Below, piece after piece: positions 25,225 through 62,102 of a stretch of 64,000 nt of DNA. The stretch lies in IMG/VR virus record IMGVR_UViG_3300042305_001773, positions 1-64,000 of that record, one strand, 5' to 3'. How positions within the stretch are numbered: the stretch's first letter is position 1; every line of letters begins with the position of its first letter. The position numbers and the translations under genes are program-made. A model generated the notes under the pieces. That model made no database searches. It was not told the origin of the DNA and saw only the letters and a list, made by a program, of their open reading frames with translations.

Positions 25225-25494
25225 TCAGCTTAAACCCATTAAAAACCGCACAAACACAAAAATCCACGCAAGCAAGCCGCTAATAGCAAAAAAAACCACA
25301 ACCGCGCTCAGGCTGACAACACGCCCGAGCTGCTGAATCGGAATTTCGCGCAACAACCGCCACGCTTTGAGGTAATCAATCGCGCCCGGTTGTTTAGGTG
25401 GCTCCGGCGTAGGTTCGGGGTTCGGTTCCGGCGTTACCGGATCTTTTTTACGCCCAAGGAGGTCACGTAATTTATCAAACAGCGCGTTAGCCAT
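25225..25494 (-). CDS. Membrane protein
   Basis: PE-rich linker, C-terminal TM segment. Confidence 0.5.
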   Translation of the reverse strand: MANALFDKLRDLLGRKKDPVTPEPNPEPTPEPPKQPGAIDYLKAWRLLREIPIQQLGRVVSLSAVVVFFAISGLLAWIFVFVRFLMGLS

Positions 25495-27325
25495 TCTTTT
25501 TACTCCAGCTTTGAATGGTGTCAAAGACGTCGTTGCCGTACAGCTGCGTCGCTTTGTCCAGCATGTTCATCTGCGGCAGTGTTCCAGTCGCGGCAGCCTG
25601 CGCCATTTGATATCTGTACTGCGGATCGAGCATCGAGCGATACAGGTGCGACTTCTGACGCGCGGCCAGAATGAAATCGCCGCGCTGCTTGGCCTTAAGC
25701 AGGTGATCGGTCACGTTTGCAAAGACCGGTTTGTTGTGGTCGTAGACAAACGGCGTCCGCAAATCGAGCAGGTTGCGGAACTGCTGCGCATATACGCTGC
25801 CTGTTGCTGCTTTCACGTGCGAACCTACGACTCCGGCCGGCGCATGAAACCGAAACTTCGTCGGTGTGTGCGTGATACCCTTGTATTTCGGCTTTGGATC
25901 GTCCACGTGCCAGTCTTGCGGTGATTGCGCAATTAATCGCCGCAAGATCTCGTGCTTTCGGTCATATTCGCGGCGATCAGAGTGCGTTTTCGCCGCACGT
26001 AACTCGTCCAGCGTGTTTGGTTTCTTTGTGCTGGGCTCTTCTTCTGCGCCCTTCTCTATTTCTTTGACTTTTTCGTAGTACAGGGGGTCTTCTTGCAGAT
26101 GATCCTTGGCAATTTCTTTGGCGACTTGATCGTTTCTTGTGTGCTCGTGCTCATGTTTAGCTCCTTCGGCTAAAGCTGGGGCAGAAAAATCCCGATCGGG
26201 TAAATTATCGGCTTCACCGCCCGGTAACAGGTCTTTTTGTCCCGAGCGGGAAAGTTCGGTGGCGGCTGTCTTAGCGACCACGGGCGCAAGCAGCTTTTTG
26301 ATGTCGGGGCCGATGTAGTCGTCGCCTTCGGGCAGGCCGGGCGCCAACGTGATGTAAGGATCGGAGCCGACTGTCGCTTTAAACACTCCCGGCTTGAGTT
26401 TGTGTTTTGCCAGCTCTAAGTAATGCTCATGCGTTTTTGACGGGTCGTTGCCCAGTGCGCGAAACGCGGTCGGTTTTACTTTGACGCCAAGTTCTTCGAA
26501 CAACTCGCGCGCCGCGGCTTGCTCCGGCGTCTCTCCTGTTTCCACGCCACCGCCGATAAAACGCCGTTTTCCGAGATTGTCGGGCCATTTTGGATTAGTA
26601 AGCGTTTCAAGCAAGTACTTATTTTCGTACGGTAACACAACGCGCACGCGAGGTTGTGGTGCGTCGGCAGCGGCTTTTAGCTCCCCCCTACTGATGGGGT
26701 TACTAAACCTATGCTCTTCCGTCGTTTCGGCAGGGGTTTCGTAACCCTTGGACTTACCGTTGTCGAGCAACACGCCTTTGCGGCGGGCGGCGACGGTAAT
26801 GTGGAACGGATGGTCGTCGTTGGGAAGTGCGGATAGGCCGTAACTCTTGCGCAGCGCCGAAAGCGCCGGACTGCTGACTTGCACGGCCCAGACTTTGCTT
26901 ACGCCATCTACGTTTTTGACGTCGATTTCTTTCAGGCCGCCCAGCGTGTAGCCGAACATGTGGCCGCGCTCATTGATCTTGTCAGCACCGATAGATGCTA
27001 CCTCATCCGCCGTCATCACCGATATATGCGCATTTACGAGATCGCCCTTAACGTTTGGAACGTTAAACACGCCCGCTGTCGGTAATTCAGCGCCGGGCTC
27101 GGTCAGGGCGTCGAACACACCGCGGACGAGCGCGTTCGGTACAGATAACAAAAGCCAGCCAGATTTGGCGAGATAGAGACGGCCGGCGAGCGGATAACTC
27201 GTGGCGGCCTGCTTGTTGCCGCTGCGATAGAGCCAGCCGAGCGCGTTACCGGCAATATAGGCAGGATGCTCGCGAAAGTAATGCGGTTCCCAAGCGAGCG
27301 GGTCGAGTGCTGAGAGGCTATCCAT
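25487..27325 (-). CDS. Multidomain protein: 2H phosphoesterase + Nudix hydrolase + DUF5661-like + unknown domains
   Basis: HISV/HITV pair; Nudix box GGVETGETPEQAAARELFEELG; EHEH...EIAKDHLQEDPLYY; domains separated by KQA, KAA, KTA, KGA, KAA. Confidence 0.8.
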   Translation of the reverse strand: MDSLSALDPLAWEPHYFREHPAYIAGNALGWLYRSGNKQAATSYPLAGRLYLAKSGWLLLSVPNALVRGVFDALTEPGAELPTAGVFNVPNVKGDLVNAHISVMTADEVASIGADKINERGHMFGYTLGGLKEIDVKNVDGVSKVWAVQVSSPALSALRKSYGLSALPNDDHPFHITVAARRKGVLLDNGKSKGYETPAETTEEHRFSNPISRGELKAAADAPQPRVRVVLPYENKYLLETLTNPKWPDNLGKRRFIGGGVETGETPEQAAARELFEELGVKVKPTAFRALGNDPSKTHEHYLELAKHKLKPGVFKATVGSDPYITLAPGLPEGDDYIGPDIKKLLAPVVAKTAATELSRSGQKDLLPGGEADNLPDRDFSAPALAEGAKHEHEHTRNDQVAKEIAKDHLQEDPLYYEKVKEIEKGAEEEPSTKKPNTLDELRAAKTHSDRREYDRKHEILRRLIAQSPQDWHVDDPKPKYKGITHTPTKFRFHAPAGVVGSHVKAATGSVYAQQFRNLLDLRTPFVYDHNKPVFANVTDHLLKAKQRGDFILAARQKSHLYRSMLDPQYRYQMAQAAATGTLPQMNMLDKATQLYGNDVFDTIQSWSKKNG

Positions 27326-27339
27326 AGCGCGCTTTCAAA

Positions 27340-27411
27340 CTGCCTGAGTAGGACTCGAACCTACAACCCCAGCATTAACAGTGCCGTGCACTACCATTGT
27401 GCTATCAGGCA
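27340..27411 (-). tRNA. tRNA-Asn(GUU)
   Basis: Cloverleaf; TGCCTGA/TCAGGCA acceptor; CTGTTAA anticodon loop; GTTCGAG T-loop; CCA not encoded. Confidence 0.92.
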
Positions 27412-27548
27412 ATGCGTGTCACGGGGTCGCGCTAATACTTGGTGTCGTCATACCCCTGACAGCGTGATGTGAAACTGCCGCGTAGGCCGACACTAGCAGC
27501 AAGAGGCAAAACACAGCGGAAGCGCCCCAAGCGGCTACGCTCAATTGT

Positions 27549-27905
27549 TTACGGACGGTCATTGTCATGCTCGTGCTCCAGTTCGCGGTCACGTTCGTGC
27601 ACAATGGTTACTTTAATTCCGGCTCCAGCTAACAAAGAGATAGCAAGATCAGTTAAAGTGGACCCGCCCATGCCCGCCAGCACGCAAATGCCGATCAGGC
27701 CGTAGACGTTTTCGGATTTCCGATAGTTTTGATACCAAATCAGAGCGATAGCCAAGCCGAGAAATCCGGCGTTTAGCATCGCGCTGACTATCGCTAGTTT
27801 AGACAGTTTCTTGGCAAACCGCAAAAGGGTTGCCAACCCGGCAAACGCAGCTGCGCCAAACGCGCTCAAAAGCACCGACAACGAATGTAATGTTTCGTCG
27901 CCCAT
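27549..27905 (-). CDS. Putative holin
   Basis: Three TM helices, GICVLAGMGG, charged C-terminal tail. Confidence 0.6.
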   Translation of the reverse strand: MGDETLHSLSVLLSAFGAAAFAGLATLLRFAKKLSKLAIVSAMLNAGFLGLAIALIWYQNYRKSENVYGLIGICVLAGMGGSTLTDLAISLLAGAGIKVTIVHERDRELEHEHDNDRP

Positions 27906-27939
27906 GGTTTTAACCGCCTGTAATTGTTAGTGTTGTAAA

Positions 27940-28163
27940 TTGTGTCAAAAGCCCCTGCGATCCCCTGTCCGCAGGACCTATCACGGCCGAAGCCGCGATT
28001 CTGCAGCAACTTTCAAGGACATAATTTCGTCCCGTGTGGCATTTGCTGCTCCTCCGCCCGTGAGCCCGACAAAATCTGACCACGGAACCTGTAACCCCCG
28101 CGGCATCCCTGCCTTAGAAGCTACGCCTAACCAGCCGACCACCACGGCTAACTTTTGACACAA
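27940..28163 (-). ncRNA. Structured ncRNA candidate
   Basis: 12-bp terminal stem TTGTGTCAAAAG/CTTTTGACACAA; UUCG hairpin; several internal stems. Confidence 0.55.
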
Positions 28164-28178
28164 CTCTAGTTTAACATG

Positions 28179-28211
28179 TTTTATCCGGCACAAGATAATG
28201 CCGGATAAAAC
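28179..28211. terminator. Perfect 13-bp hairpin, likely terminator
   Basis: GTTTTATCCGGCA-loop-TGCCGGATAAAAC. Confidence 0.5.
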
Positions 28212-28241
28212 TGCAGCGACAAATTGTCAAAGAGCGCGCTG

Positions 28242-28781: not shown

Positions 28782-29816
28782 TCAAAGAATCTTGGCGGCG
28801 ATCAGGCAGCCCCGCGCGACAGCGTGCAGCGGATCTTTGGCGTGGCGAACTTCTTTCACCGGCAGCGGAAAACCATTCTCCGCAAGTTTCTTAGTGAACA
28901 TCTCCACGAAACCTTTGGCACGCGTTGTTCCGCCGGCTAGAGATATCAAAATCGGCTCTTTGAACTTGGGCAGCGCCTTGTGGTCACGGAGCGCAGAGGC
29001 GAGCTGCTTTGTCGTGTAATCGATTAAACGCTCGTAGTACACGCTCACGGCAGCAAGGATCGCGTTGTCTCCGCCGCCCTCACCAATCACAAACGTGCCG
29101 TGCTCTTTCTCCGCCTGAACTACCGAGTCCGGCTCGTTAGTTGCCACCGCGGTCATGCGGTCGATCCAGTCACCTGACTTGGTCGTCGAGAACAGCACCG
29201 TGGGCTCGCCGTTGAGCATCACGCACACGTTCACCATACCGGCGCCCCACGACAGGCCGATGCCGGTATAGTCGTCGTGCTCTAGCTCCGAGTAGCACAG
29301 CGCTTCGGCTTCGTTGATAGCCCGGGCGGCGTATCCCTGCTCAGCCAGCACCGTGCGCACCACGTCTTCGTGATACGCCACGTCGAAGTCGTCGTCTTCT
29401 TGGTCGACGGGCTGTGCCGGCACACAGAAGATCAGCTTTTCGTGGGGTGTGCTAGCCGTGCCGACCACTTCCTTGAGGATAAACGCCAGCACGCGCTTGG
29501 CTTCCTTTTCCTTGGGGCTGACGACACCACGGTACATGGGACGCTTGGCCGAGTCATTGCGCTCGACAGCTTTCTCGATGGCGTCTTGGCCGAGAATGAT
29601 AAAACTCCCGTCGGCGTCCTTTACGAAGACTTTGCCCTGCAGCCCCTTTTCGATCATCTTCGTGGCCACGGGCGTCGTCGGCTTGATGACGTAGAACGCA
29701 TCGCGAAAGTCTTTGTACTGCACGTTGCCGACCGTGTGCGGATCGGTCGTGGAGTTTGCGGTGGCGTCTTGGGCCAGCACGATAAACGATGTTCCGACGT
29801 CTAAACCTTTAGCCAT
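28782..29816 (-). CDS. Actin-like ATPase (MreB/MamK-related fold)
   Basis: Phosphate-1 GLDVGTS, connect INEAEA, phosphate-2 SWGAGMVN, adenosine LAGGTT. Confidence 0.85.
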   Translation of the reverse strand: MAKGLDVGTSFIVLAQDATANSTTDPHTVGNVQYKDFRDAFYVIKPTTPVATKMIEKGLQGKVFVKDADGSFIILGQDAIEKAVERNDSAKRPMYRGVVSPKEKEAKRVLAFILKEVVGTASTPHEKLIFCVPAQPVDQEDDDFDVAYHEDVVRTVLAEQGYAARAINEAEALCYSELEHDDYTGIGLSWGAGMVNVCVMLNGEPTVLFSTTKSGDWIDRMTAVATNEPDSVVQAEKEHGTFVIGEGGGDNAILAAVSVYYERLIDYTTKQLASALRDHKALPKFKEPILISLAGGTTRAKGFVEMFTKKLAENGFPLPVKEVRHAKDPLHAVARGCLIAAKIL

Positions 29817-29935: not shown

Positions 29936-30297
29936 CACTTTCCCTTTAGCTGCGCAAGCTTCGACACGGACGAACTAATATCATCCTGTGTCTGCGTTGT
30001 TTTGCCAAGTTCGAGTTGTTGCGTTTTTTGCAACGTCTCGGTGTTAATTGCGCCCACGTATTTACCAGTGTCGATTTCAATCTTACCTTTGCCGGACGCA
30101 CTTTCTTTCATGGCCGCGCGCAGAGTATTTGTCGCGGGAAGTACAGATGTTGTCGGCGCGTATGTCGGCACAATACCGGCCATGCGTGCCACGAGCCAGT
30201 CCAGCCGGCCGATTGCGTAACCCAGCGCCACGCTTCCGGCGACAATTAACGCGACAACAGAGTAAGGCAGAATTAACATGTTTCCGGCTTGCGCCAT
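29935..30297 (-). CDS. Membrane-anchored protein
   Basis: N-terminal TM segment; just upstream of the actin-like gene. Confidence 0.55.
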   Translation of the reverse strand: MAQAGNMLILPYSVVALIVAGSVALGYAIGRLDWLVARMAGIVPTYAPTTSVLPATNTLRAAMKESASGKGKIEIDTGKYVGAINTETLQKTQQLELGKTTQTQDDISSSVSKLAQLKGK

Positions 30298-30977
30298 CCC
30301 CGGTGTGATTTGATGCGCCCGGCGTTCACACTGCGCATATGACAGTCACTGAGTCCGTTATGGCGACAAAAGTCTTTCAGATTGTGAATGATAACGACGT
30401 CGCCGTCTGGGTTGAGAAAGTTGTAGGTCTTGGCGTACTTTTCGCGAATCACGTTGCGCCCGCGCTCACGCAACTCTTCCATGCGCTGTTCGGGAATGCC
30501 GTGCACACCCGTTTTCATTTCGACTGATTTGGTGCCGCCAATGCTCGCCCATTTTTGCCGGGTTTCTGCGTCCATGCCCGCAAACCCAGACCCGTTGTCG
30601 TGCGAGCGCTGAGTGGCTAGTTTGCGCTGCGCGGGCGTGAGCAGAAATCGCCCGGCCGCGTTGCGATTTAAACAGACCTCTGGGCCCAAATGATCGGTGT
30701 CGGCGTGCGCTGTTTTAATCAGTTCTGTTTCTGCTTTTGATAACTCCACCGCGGCTTTTTTCGACTCCCGACGATATTGCGCCTGTAGCACAACTTTCAC
30801 GGCGTCTGCCTGATATTCGGCGTGCTCGGGATCGTTGTAGTGCGCAAACGTAACCGGCGACCCAAAGTAATAATGGTCATCTTCGGGGCTGCGGTCGGTA
30901 ATGCGCGAGCCGTAATAGAACTTGTACCCCAGCGACGGGTACAGGATTACGTACAAATAGTACCAGCGTTTACGCAT
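30273..30977 (-). CDS. Free-standing GIY-YIG/Seg-like homing endonuclease
   Basis: YLY...YYGSR...YFGS, CLNRN, C-terminal NUMOD-like NLKDFCRHNGL...HRGW. Confidence 0.7.
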   Translation of the reverse strand: MRKRWYYLYVILYPSLGYKFYYGSRITDRSPEDDHYYFGSPVTFAHYNDPEHAEYQADAVKVVLQAQYRRESKKAAVELSKAETELIKTAHADTDHLGPEVCLNRNAAGRFLLTPAQRKLATQRSHDNGSGFAGMDAETRQKWASIGGTKSVEMKTGVHGIPEQRMEELRERGRNVIREKYAKTYNFLNPDGDVVIIHNLKDFCRHNGLSDCHMRSVNAGRIKSHRGWRKPETC

Positions 30978-31267: not shown

Positions 31268-31756
31268 TCACACTTCAATCTGCTGACCATCGCGCAACAC
31301 AAAGACGCCCAGCTTTTCTTCCAGCCGGCGATACACCACGCCCGCTTCGCGCAACATCTCGTCGCCGCGGTCGCAGCTCTCTTGCCACGGGCCGTGTGCG
31401 GGTGGATGCGCGAGCCCAATAACTTCGGTGATTCCGGCGCAGATAATCGCCCGCGCACAGTCGGCACAGGCAAACCACGGGCAGTACAGCGTGGCATGCT
31501 TCGTCGGCATACCCATCTTGGCGGCGCGATAAATAACGCTGCGCTCGGCATGCTCGATGTACGAATACTTGAGCGGGCGCTGGAGTCGGTCGGTGTTTTT
31601 GATGACGTCCAGCGGTAGGCGATTGGCCTCGGAGACAATTTCGCCGCGTGGCGTGACCAGCACAGCGCCGTTTTGCGTGTGAATGTCGTCCGATTGTGTC
31701 GTCGCGACGTGGCATGCAATGCGCAGATAAAACAGTGGATTAACGACGTTTGACAT
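31268..31756 (-). CDS. dCMP deaminase
   Basis: EHAER and PWFACADCARAII motifs. Confidence 0.88.
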   Translation of the reverse strand: MSNVVNPLFYLRIACHVATTQSDDIHTQNGAVLVTPRGEIVSEANRLPLDVIKNTDRLQRPLKYSYIEHAERSVIYRAAKMGMPTKHATLYCPWFACADCARAIICAGITEVIGLAHPPAHGPWQESCDRGDEMLREAGVVYRRLEEKLGVFVLRDGQQIEV

Positions 31757-31766
31757 AGATATAAAA

Positions 31767-32015
31767 ACGCGGGCTGGATACTGGCAGCAGAACCGCTCGT
31801 GTTCTGCTTGTGCTCGTGTGACGTTGGGGCGAAGGAGGCGCTTGGAAACGTTTGAAACCCAGCAACCAGTATCCGGCACCACGGCTAACCAAGTGTGGTG
31901 CGAACACCGGGAGGACGACCGGTGTTCTGCGGCGTCACGTCCGGGATGGCGCAGAACGGACGGGAGTGATCCGTTCGCAGCGCATTCCGACCACCATGCC
32001 GCAACTCTCCCGCAT
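31767..32015 (-). ncRNA. Structured ncRNA or leader candidate
   Basis: Closing stem plus stems GGATACTGGT/GCCAGTATCC and GAACACCGG/CCGGTGTTC; G-U pairs favour the minus strand. Confidence 0.5.
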
Positions 32016-32017
32016 GT

Positions 32018-32560
32018 TCAGCTCCGTGAGTCCATGTTGTTTAACTTCCGTGCTTGCCGCAGATCGACGTCGGCCAGAATGCGCTGGATGTGCCGAGCGT
32101 CTTCGTAGCTATCCTGCAACTGATCTTCGTAGAACACTTCGAGATACGCTGCGGCGACTTTGTCGTCGAGCGACTTGAGTTGTTCAAGCCGTTTGGCGTA
32201 GGTCACAACCACTTGGCGTTCCAGCGTGTGCGCCTCAATTAAGATATCTTCGACGCGCGTGTACGTCTGGAACGGATGGCCGCCGGCACAAGGCTGAACG
32301 AAGTTAAACCCGTACAAGCAGTCCAGAAACTGCTGCACGTGATTTAGCTCGCCTTTGGCTGCTTCTGTGAGGAATTCTTTGTACTCTTCAGCGTGCAGGC
32401 CAGTGACAGCGCTGGCGTGATACAGATAGAACTGCAGATGCGTCCACTCGTTCTGCAGGTCTTCATTAATTAGTGTGACGAACTGGCCAATTGTGTATAC
32501 GCCCGGCTCGCCTTCGGGTCCGGGTTCGCCACTGTGGTTCGTTACTCCTGCGTCGGACAT
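32018..32560 (-). CDS. Ferritin-like/bacterioferritin-like protein
   Basis: NEW...Y, ELNH, LE..Y and EDARH diiron pattern. Confidence 0.75.
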   Translation of the reverse strand: MSDAGVTNHSGEPGPEGEPGVYTIGQFVTLINEDLQNEWTHLQFYLYHASAVTGLHAEEYKEFLTEAAKGELNHVQQFLDCLYGFNFVQPCAGGHPFQTYTRVEDILIEAHTLERQVVVTYAKRLEQLKSLDDKVAAAYLEVFYEDQLQDSYEDARHIQRILADVDLRQARKLNNMDSRS

Positions 32561-33749: not shown

Positions 33750-34457
33750 CTACAGCTTTTTAAGCATGGCAGCGACAAGCGGATGACGCACGACGTCACT
33801 GTGGGCAAACTGCACAACATCAATGCCCGCGATGCCCTTGAGTTTCGTCACCACTTCATTCATCGGCGGCGGTGAGATTGGTAAGTCCGTCTGCTGCGGA
33901 TCACCGGTCACGATAATCTTCGAGTTCTGCCCGAAGCGCGACAGAAACAGCTTGAACTGCGTATACGTGGCGTTTTGGGCCTCGTCAAATACGCAGATTG
34001 AATCATTGAATGTCCGGCCGCGTAGATAACATAACGGCGCGAGCACCACCGCCCGATTTACAAACTCACGCTTGGGGCCGAACTTGCCGAGTAGCGTGTC
34101 CATGGCGTCGTACAGCGGTTGCATGTACGGATTGACCTTCTCACCAAACGAGCCCGGAAGATAGCCGAGCTTTTCGCCGGCGTCCACGATTGGCCGGGTG
34201 AGCACGATTGAGGTGGCACGTCTGGCCAGCACCTCATTGATAGCAAAAGCCATCGCCAGAAACGTCTTGCCAGAACCAGCCGAGCCGAGCAAGAACGTGA
34301 TGTCGTTTTCGTTTAATGTTTTCCACGCGCGGCGCTGTGTTTCCGTGCGCCATTCAATATCACACGGCGTCAGCGCAGCTTTAACTTTTTCTTGCTGGTC
34401 TTGGCGTTTCTTCTCTTTTTTCTCGGCGCGGCGGGTAGGCCGTGATTTGGGCGCCAT
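33750..34457 (-). CDS. phoH: PhoH-family ATPase
   Basis: GSAGSGKT, LGYLPG, RGRTF, DEAQN, TGDPQQTD, RHPLV. Confidence 0.95.
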   Translation of the reverse strand: MAPKSRPTRRAEKKEKKRQDQQEKVKAALTPCDIEWRTETQRRAWKTLNENDITFLLGSAGSGKTFLAMAFAINEVLARRATSIVLTRPIVDAGEKLGYLPGSFGEKVNPYMQPLYDAMDTLLGKFGPKREFVNRAVVLAPLCYLRGRTFNDSICVFDEAQNATYTQFKLFLSRFGQNSKIIVTGDPQQTDLPISPPPMNEVVTKLKGIAGIDVVQFAHSDVVRHPLVAAMLKKL

Positions 34458-59265: not shown

Positions 59266-59466
59266 AAACAACGTTGTGCTCAGGTATGCTAGCTGGCACG
59301 GGATATCGGTCTTGGGGCTCGGGCATACCATACCACCCTAGTTTCCTAATCCGCTACGTTGTGTGTTCTAAATGCCGATGCTGGGCACTACTCCAGCAGT
59401 TTTAATCGCGTGCTCGGCATTCACACACACGACGATAAAGGGCAACGCTAGCTAGTCGTGCCCTCA

Positions 59467-59807
59467 TGGAGGCGGCGGGAATCGAACCCGCGTCCAGAAT
59501 GGTTTCCACGTAAACGTCTACATCGTTAGCGCGTTGTTCTCACACTACGCGCAAAGCCAGCCGATTATCGGCGTCAGGTGGGCTACCACCATCTTTGGCT
59601 GTCTCTCCAGCCTGTCCGCCGTCTTCCCGGCTTCCAGCGTGATGGGCGATAACGTCACGCGCGTTACCCGGTCACTGCTCAGGCAGCGAGAGCGGGGACA
59701 CTGTTGAAAGTGCCAATTAACATGTAATCGATTTTTATGCTGGCCCTTCGATCAACCAGCCGATGCAATCTACGCTTCTCTCCATCTGTCGATACCAGTA
59801 CGCCCCC
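59467..59807 (-). ncRNA. ssrA: tmRNA; tag (A)GTFNSVPALAA*
   Basis: GGGGGCG/CGCCTCCA acceptor with G3-U70; GGACGCGGGTTCGATTCCCGC T-arm; tag ORF ending ALAA-TGA. Confidence 0.93.
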
Positions 59808-60031
59808 TTAAGTTGTTGGCTGTATTCCCATTGTGAGCTTACGGCGGGTAGACCCGCCTTCATTTACCGCTGGCTCTTTTGTACGTAATTTATCCAGCAG
59901 CACCAACAACTAAATCGAAAAAGCCTCGCCGCAGGGCTGTGGTCATATCGAGTATGTTGTACCCTCCCACAATTTAAGGTAGTTAACTTTCCCCTGCATT
60001 TCGCAGCGCTGTACACACGCTGCCGAGACAA

Positions 60032-60105
60032 TAACCCGGGTGGGAGTCGAACCCACAACAAGTAGATCCTAAGTCTACCGCCTCTGCCAGTTGGGCTACC
60101 GAGTT
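60032..60105 (-). tRNA. tRNA-Leu(UAG), short variable loop
   Basis: Cloverleaf; GTAGA-CTTAGGA-TCTAC. Confidence 0.88.
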
Positions 60106-60109
60106 ATAT

Positions 60110-60182
60110 TGACCCCACGGGGATTCGAACCCCGGTAAACGGAACGAAAATCCGTTGTCCTAGGCCACTAGACGATGGGGCC
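60110..60182 (-). tRNA. tRNA-Glu(UUC)
   Basis: Cloverleaf; ACGGA-TTTTCGT-TCCGT. Confidence 0.9.
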
Positions 60183-60190
60183 GCGTGCGC

Positions 60191-60331
60191 CTAAGTATTG
60201 TCCGCGCACTCTTTCTTTTCAAGCAGCCGCTCTGTTTTCCAGAACAGACGCTTTCCGAACTTCTTCATGTGCTTGTTCCAGCCCATAATTTTTGGGCGCA
60301 CATGCAGCAGTCCGCGCTTTTTTGTGGTCAT
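60191..60331 (-). CDS. Small basic protein, 46 aa
   Basis: MTTKKRGLLHVRPKIMGWNKHMKKFGKRLFWKTER...; AAGGA RBS. Confidence 0.5.
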   Translation of the reverse strand: MTTKKRGLLHVRPKIMGWNKHMKKFGKRLFWKTERLLEKKECADNT

Positions 60332-60357
60332 GCTGTTCCTTTGATAACAAAACCCAG

Positions 60358-60428
60358 TAGCCCGCCGAGGAGTCGAACCCCGCGTTGCGAGTTAATAAGA
60401 CTCGCTTGCCAACCGGTTTCCGCGGGCC
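60358..60428 (-). tRNA. Atypical tRNA-like RNA, anticodon UAU (Ile?)
   Basis: Good acceptor stem and T-arm; 6-bp anticodon stem; U37; degenerate D-arm. Confidence 0.55.
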
Positions 60429-60491
60429 GCGTGGGTGGGGCGCCAGAGGCTTGGGCTACCTCCAGCGCCCCACCGTCAGCGAGTCTAACGC

Positions 60492-60854
60492 TTACCGGTA
60501 GCGCTTGCACGCATACCAGCGGCCATCCCTGCCACGCGCGACCCCTTGGTCAACGACCGCTCTGCCGCTATTGCTGTAGCAGCAGTTTCCCAGCGCCTGC
60601 TCGGGTGTTGAGCCCATGCCGACGCCCTCCATTCCAGAGTTTCCCCCGTAATGTCCCATGCGGCCATTGCTGGCCTGCAGCTCGGCTACGCCCTGCGCCG
60701 AACCGGTGTGCCCGGCATAAGACGTAGCGTACGAGTAGGACTTTGCAGGAGCCTGAACCTGAGACGGTGTGTAGGAACGACGGTGTCGCGGGGCAGCATG
60801 CGCAACGCTGACCAGCGAAAGAACGACGGCTACACACATGAGAAAACGGAACAT
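60492..60854 (-). CDS. Secreted protein with minimal CAP/SCP-like domain
   Basis: Signal peptide; MGH...EGVG...CCY...WYACKRY. Confidence 0.6.
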   Translation of the reverse strand: MFRFLMCVAVVLSLVSVAHAAPRHRRSYTPSQVQAPAKSYSYATSYAGHTGSAQGVAELQASNGRMGHYGGNSGMEGVGMGSTPEQALGNCCYSNSGRAVVDQGVARGRDGRWYACKRYR

Positions 60855-60921
60855 AACGATCCTCCGTGACCCCGCTGCGGGTGTGCGCAGCGTGAAAAGA
60901 AACAGGCCCCACACCGGGCAG

Positions 60922-60995
60922 TAGGCGCAAAGGGACTCGAACCCCTAACCCCCTGCGTGTAAAGCAGGTGCTCTGACCAATTGAGCTATGCGCCT
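60922..60995 (-). tRNA. tRNA-Val(UAC)
   Basis: Cloverleaf; CCTGC-TTTACAC-GCAGG. Confidence 0.92.
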
Positions 60996-61001
60996 ACAGG
61001 T

Positions 61002-61388
61002 CTAGCTGTACTTGCCACGCCATTTGTCAAAGCGCAGCATGTACCAGTTCCACCGGTCACGAACGCGCCGACCCTGTCGTCGGAGGCCACGGCAAAACCG
61101 CAGCCACGGCGTGTTCAAGCCGTTTTCGGTGAGGTACTTTCGGTACGACCATTGAACAGCCTCGTCTGATCCGGCATCAGTTATCGCCAGATCACACGCG
61201 TCGCAACGCAGGCACGGCACAGCATACACCGGTACCTGATGTATCTTACCGTCAATGCGCATGTCGTACACGTCTTTGAACGTATACGCTCTCATGGTCT
61301 CGCCGCACTGGTAACAGCAAACCGGCCTGTATACACAGGTGGACTGCTTTAACAAGTTGGGCGACAGAATGTTTTGATCCACTGACAA
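61002..61388 (-). CDS. MqsA/YgiT-type Zn-ribbon protein
   Basis: CYQCG...VPCLRCDAC. Confidence 0.55.
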   Translation of the reverse strand: MSVDQNILSPNLLKQSTCVYRPVCCYQCGETMRAYTFKDVYDMRIDGKIHQVPVYAVPCLRCDACDLAITDAGSDEAVQWSYRKYLTENGLNTPWLRFCRGLRRQGRRVRDRWNWYMLRFDKWRGKYS

Positions 61389-61404
61389 CTCCTTTCTATC
61401 AGAT

Positions 61405-61477
61405 TAGGATCGGTGGGACTCGAACCCACACTGGGAGGATTTTAAGTCCTCTGCCTCTGCCATTGGGCTACGATCCC
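61405..61477 (-). tRNA. tRNA-Leu(UAA), short variable loop
   Basis: Cloverleaf; GAGGA-CTTAAAA-TCCTC. Confidence 0.9.
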
Positions 61478-61487
61478 CCGCCGCTGT

Positions 61488-61775
61488 TCACACCAGCGTG
61501 GTTTCTTCGGGCGCCGGGTACTGCTCAGGATGAGCGATGTGCCGGAACAACGCACGCCCAGTGTCGCTGTGCGTGCCGAACATATCCCGGCGGTGCATCG
61601 TCTGCTCAACCATCTCGAACGCCTGCCGCAGGTGCAGGTATTGCGAGTAGGTTAACGGCATCCCGTTATCCAGCAGCGGCTCCAGCGCGTCGCGCAGTTT
61701 GCGCAGCTCGACGGGCAGGCGGTCGTTGTAATAGCTCGCCGTTCGTTCAAATTCATCGCGTTCGTGTGTCACCAT
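61488..61775 (-). CDS. Hypothetical protein
   Basis: ORF track. Confidence 0.5.
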   Translation of the reverse strand: MVTHERDEFERTASYYNDRLPVELRKLRDALEPLLDNGMPLTYSQYLHLRQAFEMVEQTMHRRDMFGTHSDTGRALFRHIAHPEQYPAPEETTLV

Positions 61776-61986
61776 TCCAGACGTACCTCTTGTCGCCAAT
61801 CTGGCACCACCACCGCTGCCCGTCGTTCCAGTAGACGGGAGTCACAGACGGCGATGGGGGTTGCAGCGTTGTCGGCGCGGGATGCGCCTTCTGATACTCT
61901 TCATAGCTCTGCCACGCGATTCCCGCAAGCATCAGCAACGCCGTCACCAAACCAATCACATTGCCCTTGATTTCAATACCCTTCAT
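61753..61986 (-). CDS. Small membrane protein
   Basis: AAGGAGG RBS; TM segment. Confidence 0.6.
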   Translation of the reverse strand: MKGIEIKGNVIGLVTALLMLAGIAWQSYEEYQKAHPAPTTLQPPSPSVTPVYWNDGQRWWCQIGDKRYVWNGDTRTR

Positions 61987-62031
61987 TTCAAAACCTCCTT
62001 GTTTGGAAATGACCTTCAAACAACAAAACAT

Positions 62032-62102
62032 TGGGACCGCTGGGAATCGAACCCAGACCGAGGGATTAAAAGTCCCCTGCTCGACCTTCGAGCTACGGTC
62101 CC
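62032..62102 (-). tRNA. tRNA-Lys(UUU)
   Basis: Cloverleaf; GGGGA-CTTTTAA-TCCCT. Confidence 0.9.

What the first reader, a model, noticed from the sequence alone, without database searches (positions are those of the whole stretch)
31767..32015. Second structured RNA sharing sequence words with the 28-kb RNA
Seen: a 250-nt intergenic multi-stem element directly before dCMP deaminase. It shares the 13-mer GTTAGCCGTGGTG (31877-31889 and 28140-28152) and TGGTGGTCGG (31987-31996 and 28135-28144) with the 27.9-kb element. Inference: related RNAs or a common protein/RNA partner; a nucleotide-sensing leader is also possible.
Basis: partly seen in the sequence, partly recalled or inferred. Interest (0 to 1): 0.6.

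Follow-up and report, generated by a model that had tools for sequence, protein, structure and literature searches.

The report
New folded RNA gene in lake phages
The 250-base stretch before the dCMP deaminase gene is a real, conserved, pseudoknotted RNA of a new family found only in a group of 200-kb freshwater phages. It is neither a relative of the 28-kb RNA nor a switch for the deaminase gene.

Summary
Window 31767-32015 (minus strand, "E2") is a multi-stem element, and both shared words occur only at the two stated sites in the 205-kb phage genome.

E2 is a genuine structured RNA:
- It is conserved in 19 distinct phage contigs.
- Five helices are supported by compensatory changes.
- G-U pairs fix the minus strand as the RNA strand.
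- A loop-loop pseudoknot is complementary in 19 of 19 sequences, in four sequence variants.
- No Rfam family matches it.

- E2 and the 28-kb RNA (E1) do not hit each other's profiles.
- The 13-mer lies in different structural contexts in the two RNAs.
- The 13-mer survives only in the four closest genomes. Local E1-E2 similarity falls to shuffle level in distant phages that carry both RNAs.
- The gene downstream of E2 varies: dCMP deaminase, ferritin-like, PD-(D/E)XK nuclease, glycosyltransferase, unknowns. It is therefore not a deaminase or nucleotide leader.

E2 sits in a slot next to the ferritin-like gene. Relatives without E2 hold tRNA-Asn in that slot, and in one phage E2 abuts tRNA-Ser.

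Best reading: a free-standing stable RNA gene, analogous to tRNA-associated phage RNAs such as GOLLD and ROOL. Its function is unknown, and no expression data exist.

The parts
31767..32015 (-). E2 RNA, whole element: 249 nt, a five-way junction closed by helix P1
   Evidence: Conserved at 80-97% in close relatives and recognisable in 19 distinct contigs. RNAalifold on the MAFFT alignment gives 77 pairs, 19 of them with compensatory changes.
32009..32015 (-). P1 5' strand (AUGCGGG); it pairs with 31767-31773 (CCCGCGU)
   Evidence: pairs 3-9 with 246-252. Covaries: GCGGA/UCCGC in L077, GCAGG/CCUGC in L078.
31928..32003 (-). Stem A: a long irregular hairpin, variable in length and absent in L074. 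It contains the shared 10-mer at 31987-31996.
   Evidence: The base helix UGCGGC/GCCGCA becomes CGCAGG/CCUGCG in the distant group. The 10-mer changes to TGGTGGCCGG, TGGTAGCCGG, TGGCGACCAG and TGGTGGTTTG in relatives.
31902..31927 (-). Stem B hairpin (GAACACCGG / CCGGUGUUC)
   Evidence: Eight of its nine pairs show double changes (pairs 92-100 with 109-117).
31876..31901 (-). Stem C (GCACCAC / GUGGUGC) with a 12-nt loop. The shared 13-mer (31877-31889) is the loop's 3' part plus the 3' strand of the stem.
   Evidence: The stem covaries (CACCUU/GAGGUG, CACUCC/GGAGUG, UACUUU/AAAGUA). In the loop only RGCC is conserved.
31889..31893 (-). Pseudoknot strand 1: CUUGG in the stem-C loop. It pairs with CCAAG at 31841-31845.
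   Evidence: Read-out: UUGG/CCAA (10 sequences), UCGG/CCGA (7), UUGA/UCAA (L074), UCAG/CUGA (L082). Complementary in 19 of 19, and three of the four pairs show double changes.
31776..31874 (-). Stem D domain, the conserved core. It comprises the outer helix GGAUACUGGU/GCCAGUAUCC, the inner helix GGGU/GCCC with a 26-nt loop, the invariant UUCGCCC and ACGAGCA-AA, and hairpin E.
   Evidence: 95.2% of cells paired against 82.7% in shuffles, 21 of 33 pairs with double changes, reached by 0 of 500 shuffles.
31786..31808 (-). Hairpin E (AGCAGAAC / GUUCUGCU) with the invariant loop ACGAGCG. This is the second copy of the ACGAGC word.
   Evidence: pairs 96-103 with 111-118; five of these pairs show double changes.
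27938..28165 (-). E1, the '28-kb RNA'. It is a separate and more widespread structured RNA family, always directly upstream of a 3-TM membrane protein gene (27549-27905).
   Evidence: 30 distinct sequences. 69 pairs, 45 of them with compensatory changes. Synteny.
32018..32560 (-). Ferritin-like gene, the usual neighbour of E2 (upstream here)
   Evidence: Pfam PF00210, E = 8e-10. Adjacent to E2 on one side or the other in most contexts.
31268..31756 (-). dCMP deaminase. Its start codon lies 10 nt after P1, with no Shine-Dalgarno sequence.
   Evidence: Pfam PF00383, PHROG 174, flanking sequence.
33750..34457 (-). PhoH-like ATPase (PhoH domain only). It lies upstream of E2 on the same strand wherever the contig extends far enough.
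   Evidence: Pfam PF02562, E = 2.6e-66. Synteny.
27339..27412 (-). tRNA-Asn(GTT). In relatives that lack E2 this tRNA occupies the slot after the ferritin-like gene.

Best explanation
E2 is a free-standing gene for a stable, compactly folded noncoding RNA of a new family.

Architecture: about 230-290 nt; closing helix P1; variable 5' stems A and B; a conserved 3' core made of stem C, stem D and hairpin E, locked by a kissing pseudoknot.

Distribution: a subclade of about 200-kb freshwater phages.

Proposed biogenesis and action: it is transcribed with its neighbours on the minus strand, probably excised like a tRNA, and acts in trans through its fold, either as an RNA-only particle or with a protein partner. 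It does not act by controlling the gene behind it.

Shown: the structure, the strand, conservation above that of the flanking proteins, single copy, a variable downstream gene, a shared slot with tRNAs, and no homology to E1.

Inferred: excision, stability and trans action.

Unknown: the biochemical activity.
For: Structure and strand:
- Compensatory changes support every helix in MAFFT alignments that were not fitted to a structure.
- The model-fitted alignment gives 95.2% paired cells against 82.7% in shuffles.
- The pseudoknot is complementary in 19 of 19 sequences, in four variants.
- Invariant G-U pairs, such as 24-82, 154-234 and 162-189, would be C-A mismatches on the other strand.

Conservation:
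- E2 is 80% identical at the nucleotide level where the adjacent ferritin-like protein is 62% identical.

Not tied to one gene:
- E2 lies downstream of the ferritin-like gene in 13 contexts, upstream of it in 4, and 6 kb away in one.
- The downstream genes are dCMP deaminase, ferritin-like, PD-(D/E)XK nuclease, glycosyltransferase and unknowns.

Link to tRNAs:
- In six E2-less relatives the same post-ferritin slot holds tRNA-Asn.
- In L054 the order is E2, ferritin-like gene, tRNA-Asn.
- In L114 E2 is followed after 7-9 nt by tRNA-Ser.

Precedents and exclusions:
- The conserved 3' / variable 5' layout and the phage plus tRNA neighbourhood mirror what is written of GOLLD and ROOL (10.1101/2024.12.08.627333).
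- No Rfam match at E <= 10.
- No RT, Ro60 or RtcB in the genome.
Against: - There is no expression evidence: only DNA metagenome runs hold this sequence.
- No convincing promoter or terminator of its own was found.
- A start codon follows P1 within 5-40 nt in most genomes, so a cis role on the downstream mRNA (stability or translation) cannot be excluded.
- tRNA adjacency is direct in only one genome.
- Two complete relatives do without E2 (with the positive control), so it is dispensable for the phage type.
Confidence: 0.6

Rival explanations
1. E2 is the RNA partner or substrate of the phage PhoH-like ATPase, by analogy with the lineage-specific multistem RNAs reported next to bacterial PhoH2 genes. 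This is a specific version of the trans-acting reading.
For: A PhoH-domain gene lies upstream of E2 on the same strand wherever the contig reaches far enough. The distance is 95 nt in L070, 620-780 nt in L041, L082 and L083, and 1.7 kb in the window. PhoH2-associated structured RNAs located 5' or 3' of phoH2 are described in 10.64898/2026.10.21.760802.
Against: Relatives keep the PhoH-like gene without E2 (L017, L024, L027, L031, L036, L205). One to three genes intervene in many genomes. The protein has the PhoH domain only, with no PIN domain. Gene order is conserved across the whole clade, so adjacency carries little information.
Confidence: 0.15
2. E2 is a cis-acting leader or riboswitch, for example a nucleotide sensor, that controls the gene directly downstream. 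This was one of the first reader's alternatives.
For: The conserved junctions and pseudoknot resemble aptamer architecture. A start codon follows P1 within 5-40 nt in most genomes. The sequence after P1 is mostly U-rich. In the window the deaminase has no Shine-Dalgarno sequence.
Against: Downstream genes are functionally unrelated across 19 contexts, and dCMP deaminase follows E2 in only 6 of them. In L114 the next gene is a tRNA. No alternative pairing or terminator hairpin could be identified. The size of 230-290 nt with dispensable stems is large for an aptamer.
Confidence: 0.12
3. E2 and E1 are related RNAs, or they share a partner that reads the common words.
For: The 13-mer and the local alignment are nominally significant in this genome. 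Both RNAs are syntenic and on the same strand, and every E2 phage with enough contig also has E1. Both carry a conserved GGYGG word.
Against: No profile or covariance-model cross-hit. The words sit in different structural contexts. The 13-mer is lost in L047 and beyond. Similarity equals shuffles in L016, L054, L070, L077 and L114. In each RNA the GUGG part pairs with a CCAC partner of its own. E1 exists without E2 in complete genomes. A candidate 11-bp E1-E2 duplex (GGGCGGAGGAG with CUCCUUCGCCC) is not maintained where either side changes.
Confidence: 0.05
4. E2 is a self-cleaving or processing ribozyme, or a nuclease-blocking element, that punctuates or stabilises the polycistronic transcript.
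For: A pseudoknotted conserved core sits between genes of one transcription unit. Several small ribozyme classes are frequent in phages (my own knowledge, not tested here).
Against: No match to any ribozyme family in Rfam. No cleavage-site signature can be read from sequence. The element is far larger than needed for a stability element.
Confidence: 0.06
5. The element acts as DNA, for example as an origin, a packaging site or a recombination site made of inverted repeats.
For: Both strands fold better than shuffles.
Against: Many conserved G-U pairs, and G-U intermediates of compensatory changes, are valid only on the minus-strand RNA. A pseudoknot with covariation is hard to explain for duplex DNA.
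Confidence: 0.02

Closest known systems
GOLLD and ROOL RNAs (large ornate phage/prophage RNAs; Rfam families)
   Same: They are encoded by phages, often next to tRNAs, with complex pseudoknotted folds, no known protein partner and unknown function. [quoted passage not shown] E2 has the same layout and shares a slot with tRNA-Asn or abuts tRNA-Ser.
   Different: There is no sequence or structure match in Rfam. E2 is about 250 nt, against 500-800 nt or more. Multimeric cage formation is untested.
Phage T4 RNAC and RNAD (small stable RNAs of the tRNA region)
   Same: They are phage-encoded stable RNAs of still unknown function (PMC9697503). That they lie beside the T4 tRNA genes is my own knowledge, not tested here.
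   Different: No homology was tested or is expected. They are smaller, and E2 has no expression data.
PhoH2-associated structured ncRNAs (COMPASS preprint 10.64898/2026.10.21.760802)
   Same: They are multistem, lineage-specific RNAs with no Rfam annotation, encoded 5' or 3' of a PhoH-domain gene. E2 lies downstream of a PhoH-like gene.
   Different: Those RNAs are bacterial, and their partner has PIN plus PhoH domains; here the protein has PhoH only. Other genes intervene, and PhoH-like genes occur without E2. Their sequences could not be compared here.
E1, the 28-kb RNA of the same phage (window 27938-28165)
   Same: Same strand and same gene neighbourhood. It is also new to Rfam, also closed by a long P1, and also has a loop pseudoknot.
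   Different: It is a different family (no cross-hit) with a different architecture and a wider distribution. It has a fixed position in front of a membrane-protein gene with a conserved TGTTAAAAT box upstream, so it may be a leader.

Membership tests
Any Rfam 15 family (riboswitches, ribozymes, GOLLD, ROOL, RNase P, 6S, Y RNA and others) | A covariance-model score at or near the family's gathering threshold | tested here: not met
   Nothing at gathering level. On the 301-nt stretch alone, with lax filters, the best hits are 12-18 bits against thresholds of 33-60 bits, at E = 1-7. E1 likewise has no hit.
Same family as E1 (the 28-kb RNA) | Detectable homology in sequence or structure | tested here: not met
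   nhmmer profiles do not cross-hit at E <= 1. E2 core model R1 does not hit E1 at E <= 1.
Same family as E1 (the 28-kb RNA) | Shared words conserved in relatives and lying in equivalent structural positions | tested here: not met
   The 13-mer is kept in 4 of 13 genome pairs. Local similarity equals the null in distant pairs. In E2 the word is loop plus 3' stem strand; in E1 it is 5' stem strand plus loop.
Riboswitch or cis-regulatory leader of dCMP deaminase (nucleotide metabolism) | A constant position upstream of one gene or one functional class of genes | tested here: not met
   Downstream genes are dCMP deaminase (6 contexts), ferritin-like (2), PD-(D/E)XK nuclease (2), glycosyltransferase, tRNA-Ser and unknowns.
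Riboswitch or cis-regulatory leader of dCMP deaminase (nucleotide metabolism) | An expression platform: a terminator or SD-sequestering alternative helix | tested here: inconclusive
   The tail after P1 is U-rich in most sequences, but there is no local terminator hairpin, and the scan is at background level.
Riboswitch or cis-regulatory leader of dCMP deaminase (nucleotide metabolism) | Ligand binding | not testable with these tools
   Needs in-line probing or ITC.
tRNA-associated phage 'ornate' RNAs (GOLLD/ROOL-like, by analogy only) | Encoded by phages, next to tRNA genes | tested here: met
   E2 is found only on phage-like contigs. It shares a slot with tRNA-Asn, and tRNA-Ser lies 7-9 nt downstream in L114.
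tRNA-associated phage 'ornate' RNAs (GOLLD/ROOL-like, by analogy only) | Length above 500 nt and homo-oligomeric cage assembly | tested here: not met
   E2 is 230-290 nt long. Assembly is not testable here.
Retron, DGR or group II type RNA | An associated reverse transcriptase | tested here: not met
   No RVT_1 match in the complete genome, and the controls ring.
Y-RNA-like (YrlA) | Ro60/TROVE protein, usually with RtcB, encoded nearby | tested here: not met
   No TROVE or RtcB match in the genome.
PhoH2-associated ncRNA | Adjacent PIN-PhoH (PhoH2) gene | tested here: not met
   The neighbouring protein is 235 aa with the PhoH domain only. It is present upstream, but genes intervene and it also occurs without E2.

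The most novel reading that the evidence does not exclude
E2, and independently E1, is a founding member of a new class of compact, pseudoknotted phage RNAs that occupy tRNA slots. In this reading it acts as an autonomous RNA machine: a smaller sibling of ROOL/GOLLD that self-assembles, a new ribozyme, or the RNA cofactor of the enigmatic phage PhoH ATPase.
Probability: 0.25. Interest if true: 0.8.

Novelty: new member of a known kind. Interest (0 to 1): 0.55.

Why it matters
Phage PhoH, phage ferritin-like proteins and the large tRNA-associated phage RNAs all lack a known function.

This is a new RNA family of about 250 nt, well supported by covariation. It has a defined pseudoknotted core and a dispensable periphery. 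It is small enough for in vitro transcription, chemical probing and cryo-EM.

A second, more widespread RNA (E1) lies 3.6 kb away. E1 is fixed in front of a membrane-protein gene and is a candidate new leader or riboswitch.

The case also shows that a statistically 'significant' shared 13-mer between two RNAs can be a lineage-specific coincidence, which comparative data expose.

Tried and rejected
- Rfam at gathering level and at E <= 10, on the window and on each element alone: nothing.
- blastn and tblastn against named phages: only the tRNA and two uncultured huge phages matched, so there are no cultured relatives.
- E1/E2 homology by nhmmer and by covariance model: negative.
- Intermolecular duplex E1 GGGCGGAGGAG with E2 CUCCUUCGCCC (11 bp in the window): rejected. 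E1 changes to GGUUGGCGG or GAUCGGAGGC without any change in E2, and E2's CCUCC varies (GUCC, UUCC, CCCU).
- Anti-Shine-Dalgarno mimic (CCUCCUU): rejected for the same reason.
- A 5' extension that pairs an upstream CACGGAG with the CCUCC loop: seen in some sequences, absent in L046, L047 and L006; left open and weak.
- A promoter for E2: TTAAAC-like words upstream coincide with conserved ferritin-like codons, and the genome-wide motif count is uninformative.
- RNase P-like reading of GGGARAGU and ACGGGCGGAGG, compared from memory of E. coli M1 RNA: no support from Rfam, and the architecture does not fit.
- Search for a diverged E2 in E1-only phages by covariance model and by core motifs: none found; tRNA-Asn was found in the slot instead.
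- The pattern scan for E1 (GGTTAGG...CAKGGATG) was too loose, and most of its 120 hits were chance; they were filtered with nhmmer.
- MAFFT misplaced the 33-nt insert of the distant group (A5), so model R1 was built from the 13 insert-free sequences. In A7 the model aligned the insert hairpin as stem C for six sequences, and one weak hit (L019, E = 0.83) is included. The helix-1 counts are therefore somewhat inflated; searches are the unbiased counts.
- Sequencing runs: 24 DNA runs from lakes and fresh water, no RNA run. Read laying was not used because contigs cannot show RNA ends.
- Supplementary alignments of the 10,006 viral csRNA set are not held, so prior listing of fragments of E1 or E2 there could not be checked. 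That set's maximum length is 151 nt.

Full report
**Setting.** The window is the first 64 kb of a 205,044-bp IMG/VR phage record rated 100% complete. The same sequence is held by lake and freshwater DNA metagenomes. Genes around the finding run on the minus strand.

Gene order on that strand:
- PhoH-like ATPase, 33750-34457
- ORF of unknown function
- methyltransferase
- ferritin-like protein, 32018-32560
- E2
- dCMP deaminase, 31268-31756
- small ORF
- homing-endonuclease-like ORF
- ORF of unknown function
- actin-like protein (Volactin family)
- ORF of unknown function
- E1
- membrane protein with three TM segments, 27549-27905
- tRNA-Asn
- 2H-phosphoesterase/NUDIX protein

**Observation.** In E1 they overlap and form one 18-mer.
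- A shared 13-mer between the two elements is rare in dinucleotide shuffles: 1 in 3000. A 10-mer is not rare: 6.7%.
- E2 folds better than shuffles on both strands, with z = -3.7 (minus) and -4.1 (plus).

**E2 is a real RNA.**
- blastn and nhmmer against related phage loci recover E2 in 19 distinct contigs. Identity is 80-97% in close relatives, where the neighbouring ferritin-like protein is only 62-92% identical.
- RNAalifold on plain MAFFT alignments gives 77 pairs with 19 compensated among 9 full-length sequences. For the 3' core it gives 33 pairs with 13 compensated among 13 sequences.
- On the model-based alignment, 95.2% of cells pair against 82.7% in shuffles, and 21 pairs show double changes; no shuffle of 500 reached this (with the caveats listed under Tried and rejected).
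- Invariant G-U pairs and G-U intermediates fix the minus strand as the RNA strand.

**Architecture of E2.**
- A 7-bp P1 closes a five-way junction.
- Stems A and B are variable, and stem A is missing in L074.
- The 3' two-thirds is the conserved core, made of stem C, stem D and hairpin E. It holds the invariant words UUCGCCC, ACGAGCA-AA and the loop ACGAGCG.
- The loop of stem C pairs with the large inner loop of stem D. The pairing is UUGG/CCAA in 10 sequences, UCGG/CCGA in 7, UUGA/UCAA in L074 and UCAG/CUGA in L082. It is complementary in all 19.
- A subgroup carries an extra hairpin of about 33 nt between stems C and D.

**Distribution of E2.**
- No Rfam family matches.
- E2 is single copy per genome.
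- It occurs only on phage-like contigs from viral and metagenome collections. The pattern hits in named bacteria were chance.

**Relation to E1.** E1 (27938-28165) is itself a very well supported RNA, with 69 pairs of which 45 are compensated, in 19 aligned sequences. It is found in about 30 distinct contigs.

The two are not related:
- Their profiles do not cross-hit, and the E2 covariance model does not find E1.
- In E2 the 13-mer is loop plus the 3' strand of stem C, and that strand covaries with its partner (GAGGUG, GGAGUG, AAAGUA and others).
- In E1 the 13-mer is the end of P1, the 5' strand of hairpin P2 (which also covaries) and five loop bases. Those loop bases appear to pair with GCCAC further on: UGGCGGU goes with GCCGCAC in L035.
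- The 13-mer is intact only in the window, L005, L004 and L046.
- The local alignment score is significant only in the window and L005 (the two closest of the 11 genomes tested). It sinks to the shuffle mean in L016, L054, L070, L077 and L114, all of which carry both RNAs.
- The 10-mer differs between E1 and E2 in most genomes, with no coupling.
- Two complete relatives have E1 but no E2 (positive controls). Every E2 phage with enough contig has E1.

The shared words are thus a shallow, lineage-specific coincidence between two G-rich helix strands.

**Not a deaminase leader.** E2 lies just after the ferritin-like gene in 13 contexts, before it in four, and 6 kb away in one.

The gene behind E2 is:
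- dCMP deaminase in six phages
- ferritin-like in two
- a PD-(D/E)XK nuclease in two
- a glycosyltransferase in one
- unknown ORFs in the others
- tRNA-Ser, 7-9 nt after P1, in L114

No terminator or anti-SD helix was found.

**What it most likely is.**
- In six relatives without E2, the slot after the ferritin-like gene holds tRNA-Asn(GTT). This is the same tRNA that lies next to E1 in the window. In L054 the order is E2, ferritin-like gene, tRNA-Asn.
- E2 therefore behaves like a stable-RNA gene that shares sites with tRNAs. The same is written of the phage RNAs GOLLD and ROOL, and GOLLD also has a conserved 3' part and a variable 5' part. T4 RNAC and RNAD are a further precedent of phage stable RNAs without known function.
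- I take E2 to be a trans-acting folded RNA, released from the polycistronic transcript, that works through its conserved pseudoknotted core. Its activity is unknown.
- A link to the upstream PhoH-like ATPase is a lead suggested by the reported PhoH2-associated RNAs. It is weak here, because PhoH-like genes occur without E2 and other genes intervene.
- Reverse transcriptase, Ro60 and RtcB are absent from the genome.

**Limits.** There are no RNA data, no cultured relative, and the transcript ends are inferred from P1 only.

Noticed in passing
window 27938-28165 (-), with flanks 27906-28241: E1 is a separate new structured RNA family with about 30 distinct sequences, and 45 of its 69 pairs are compensated. 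It always lies 25-130 nt upstream of a conserved 3-TM membrane-protein gene (27549-27905). A conserved TGTTAAAAT-like extended -10 box lies about 6 nt before P1, and a strong hairpin (28176-28215) lies before that. It is a candidate leader or riboswitch of the membrane protein.
   Followed up: partly
window 28140-28146 loop with about 28050-28056 (-): Candidate pseudoknot in E1: the P2 loop GUGGU pairs with GCCAC. One compensatory change (loop UGGCGGU with GCCGCAC in L035) and one one-sided change (G to A, keeping U-A) support it.
   Followed up: partly
window 27339-27412; L051:4065-4136, L018:3138-3211, L023:3445-3518, L020:4506-4577, L024:6570-6643, L031:6495-6567: The phage tRNA-Asn(GTT) gene occupies two alternative positions in this phage group: after the membrane-protein gene, or after the ferritin-like gene. 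It is a mobile stable-RNA gene within a conserved gene order.
   Followed up: partly
L114:8814-8901 (-): tRNA-Ser(TGA) starts 7-9 nt after the 3' end of E2. RNase P cleavage there would define the 3' end of E2.
   Followed up: no
window 59464-62102 (-): A phage-encoded tmRNA (tag peptide GTFNSVPALAA) is followed by five tRNA genes: Leu-TAG, Glu, Val, Leu-TAA and Lys.
   Followed up: no
window 28782-29816 (-): An actin-like protein matches the Volactin family over its full length (E = 8e-62). It is 76-98% identical across the whole phage group. The only database phages with a match are two uncultured huge phages of 485 and 595 kb, at 32% identity.
   Followed up: no
window 30273-30977 (-); L070:11479-11961, L071:653-1099: Free-standing homing-endonuclease-like genes lie near the RNAs: here one with an HNH-type C-terminus, and in L070 and L071 a PD-(D/E)XK nuclease directly after E2. 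Such genes often settle beside highly conserved sequence.
   Followed up: no
window 25487-27325 (-): A 612-aa protein combines a 2H phosphoesterase ('Swiss Army Knife'), NUDIX and DUF5661 domains. It lies directly after tRNA-Asn and may be involved in RNA-end repair.
   Followed up: no
L236:4259-4388 (-): A divergent E2-like sequence (59.5 bits with R1) sits on a 4.5-kb metagenome contig. It keeps CACGAGCAGAA and the loop CACGAGCGG, but stem C and the inner loop differ and the pseudoknot is not evident.
   Followed up: partly
window 31754-31773 (-): The dCMP deaminase start codon follows P1 after only 10 nt of A/U-rich sequence, with no Shine-Dalgarno motif. Several relatives have GGAG in that position.
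   Followed up: no
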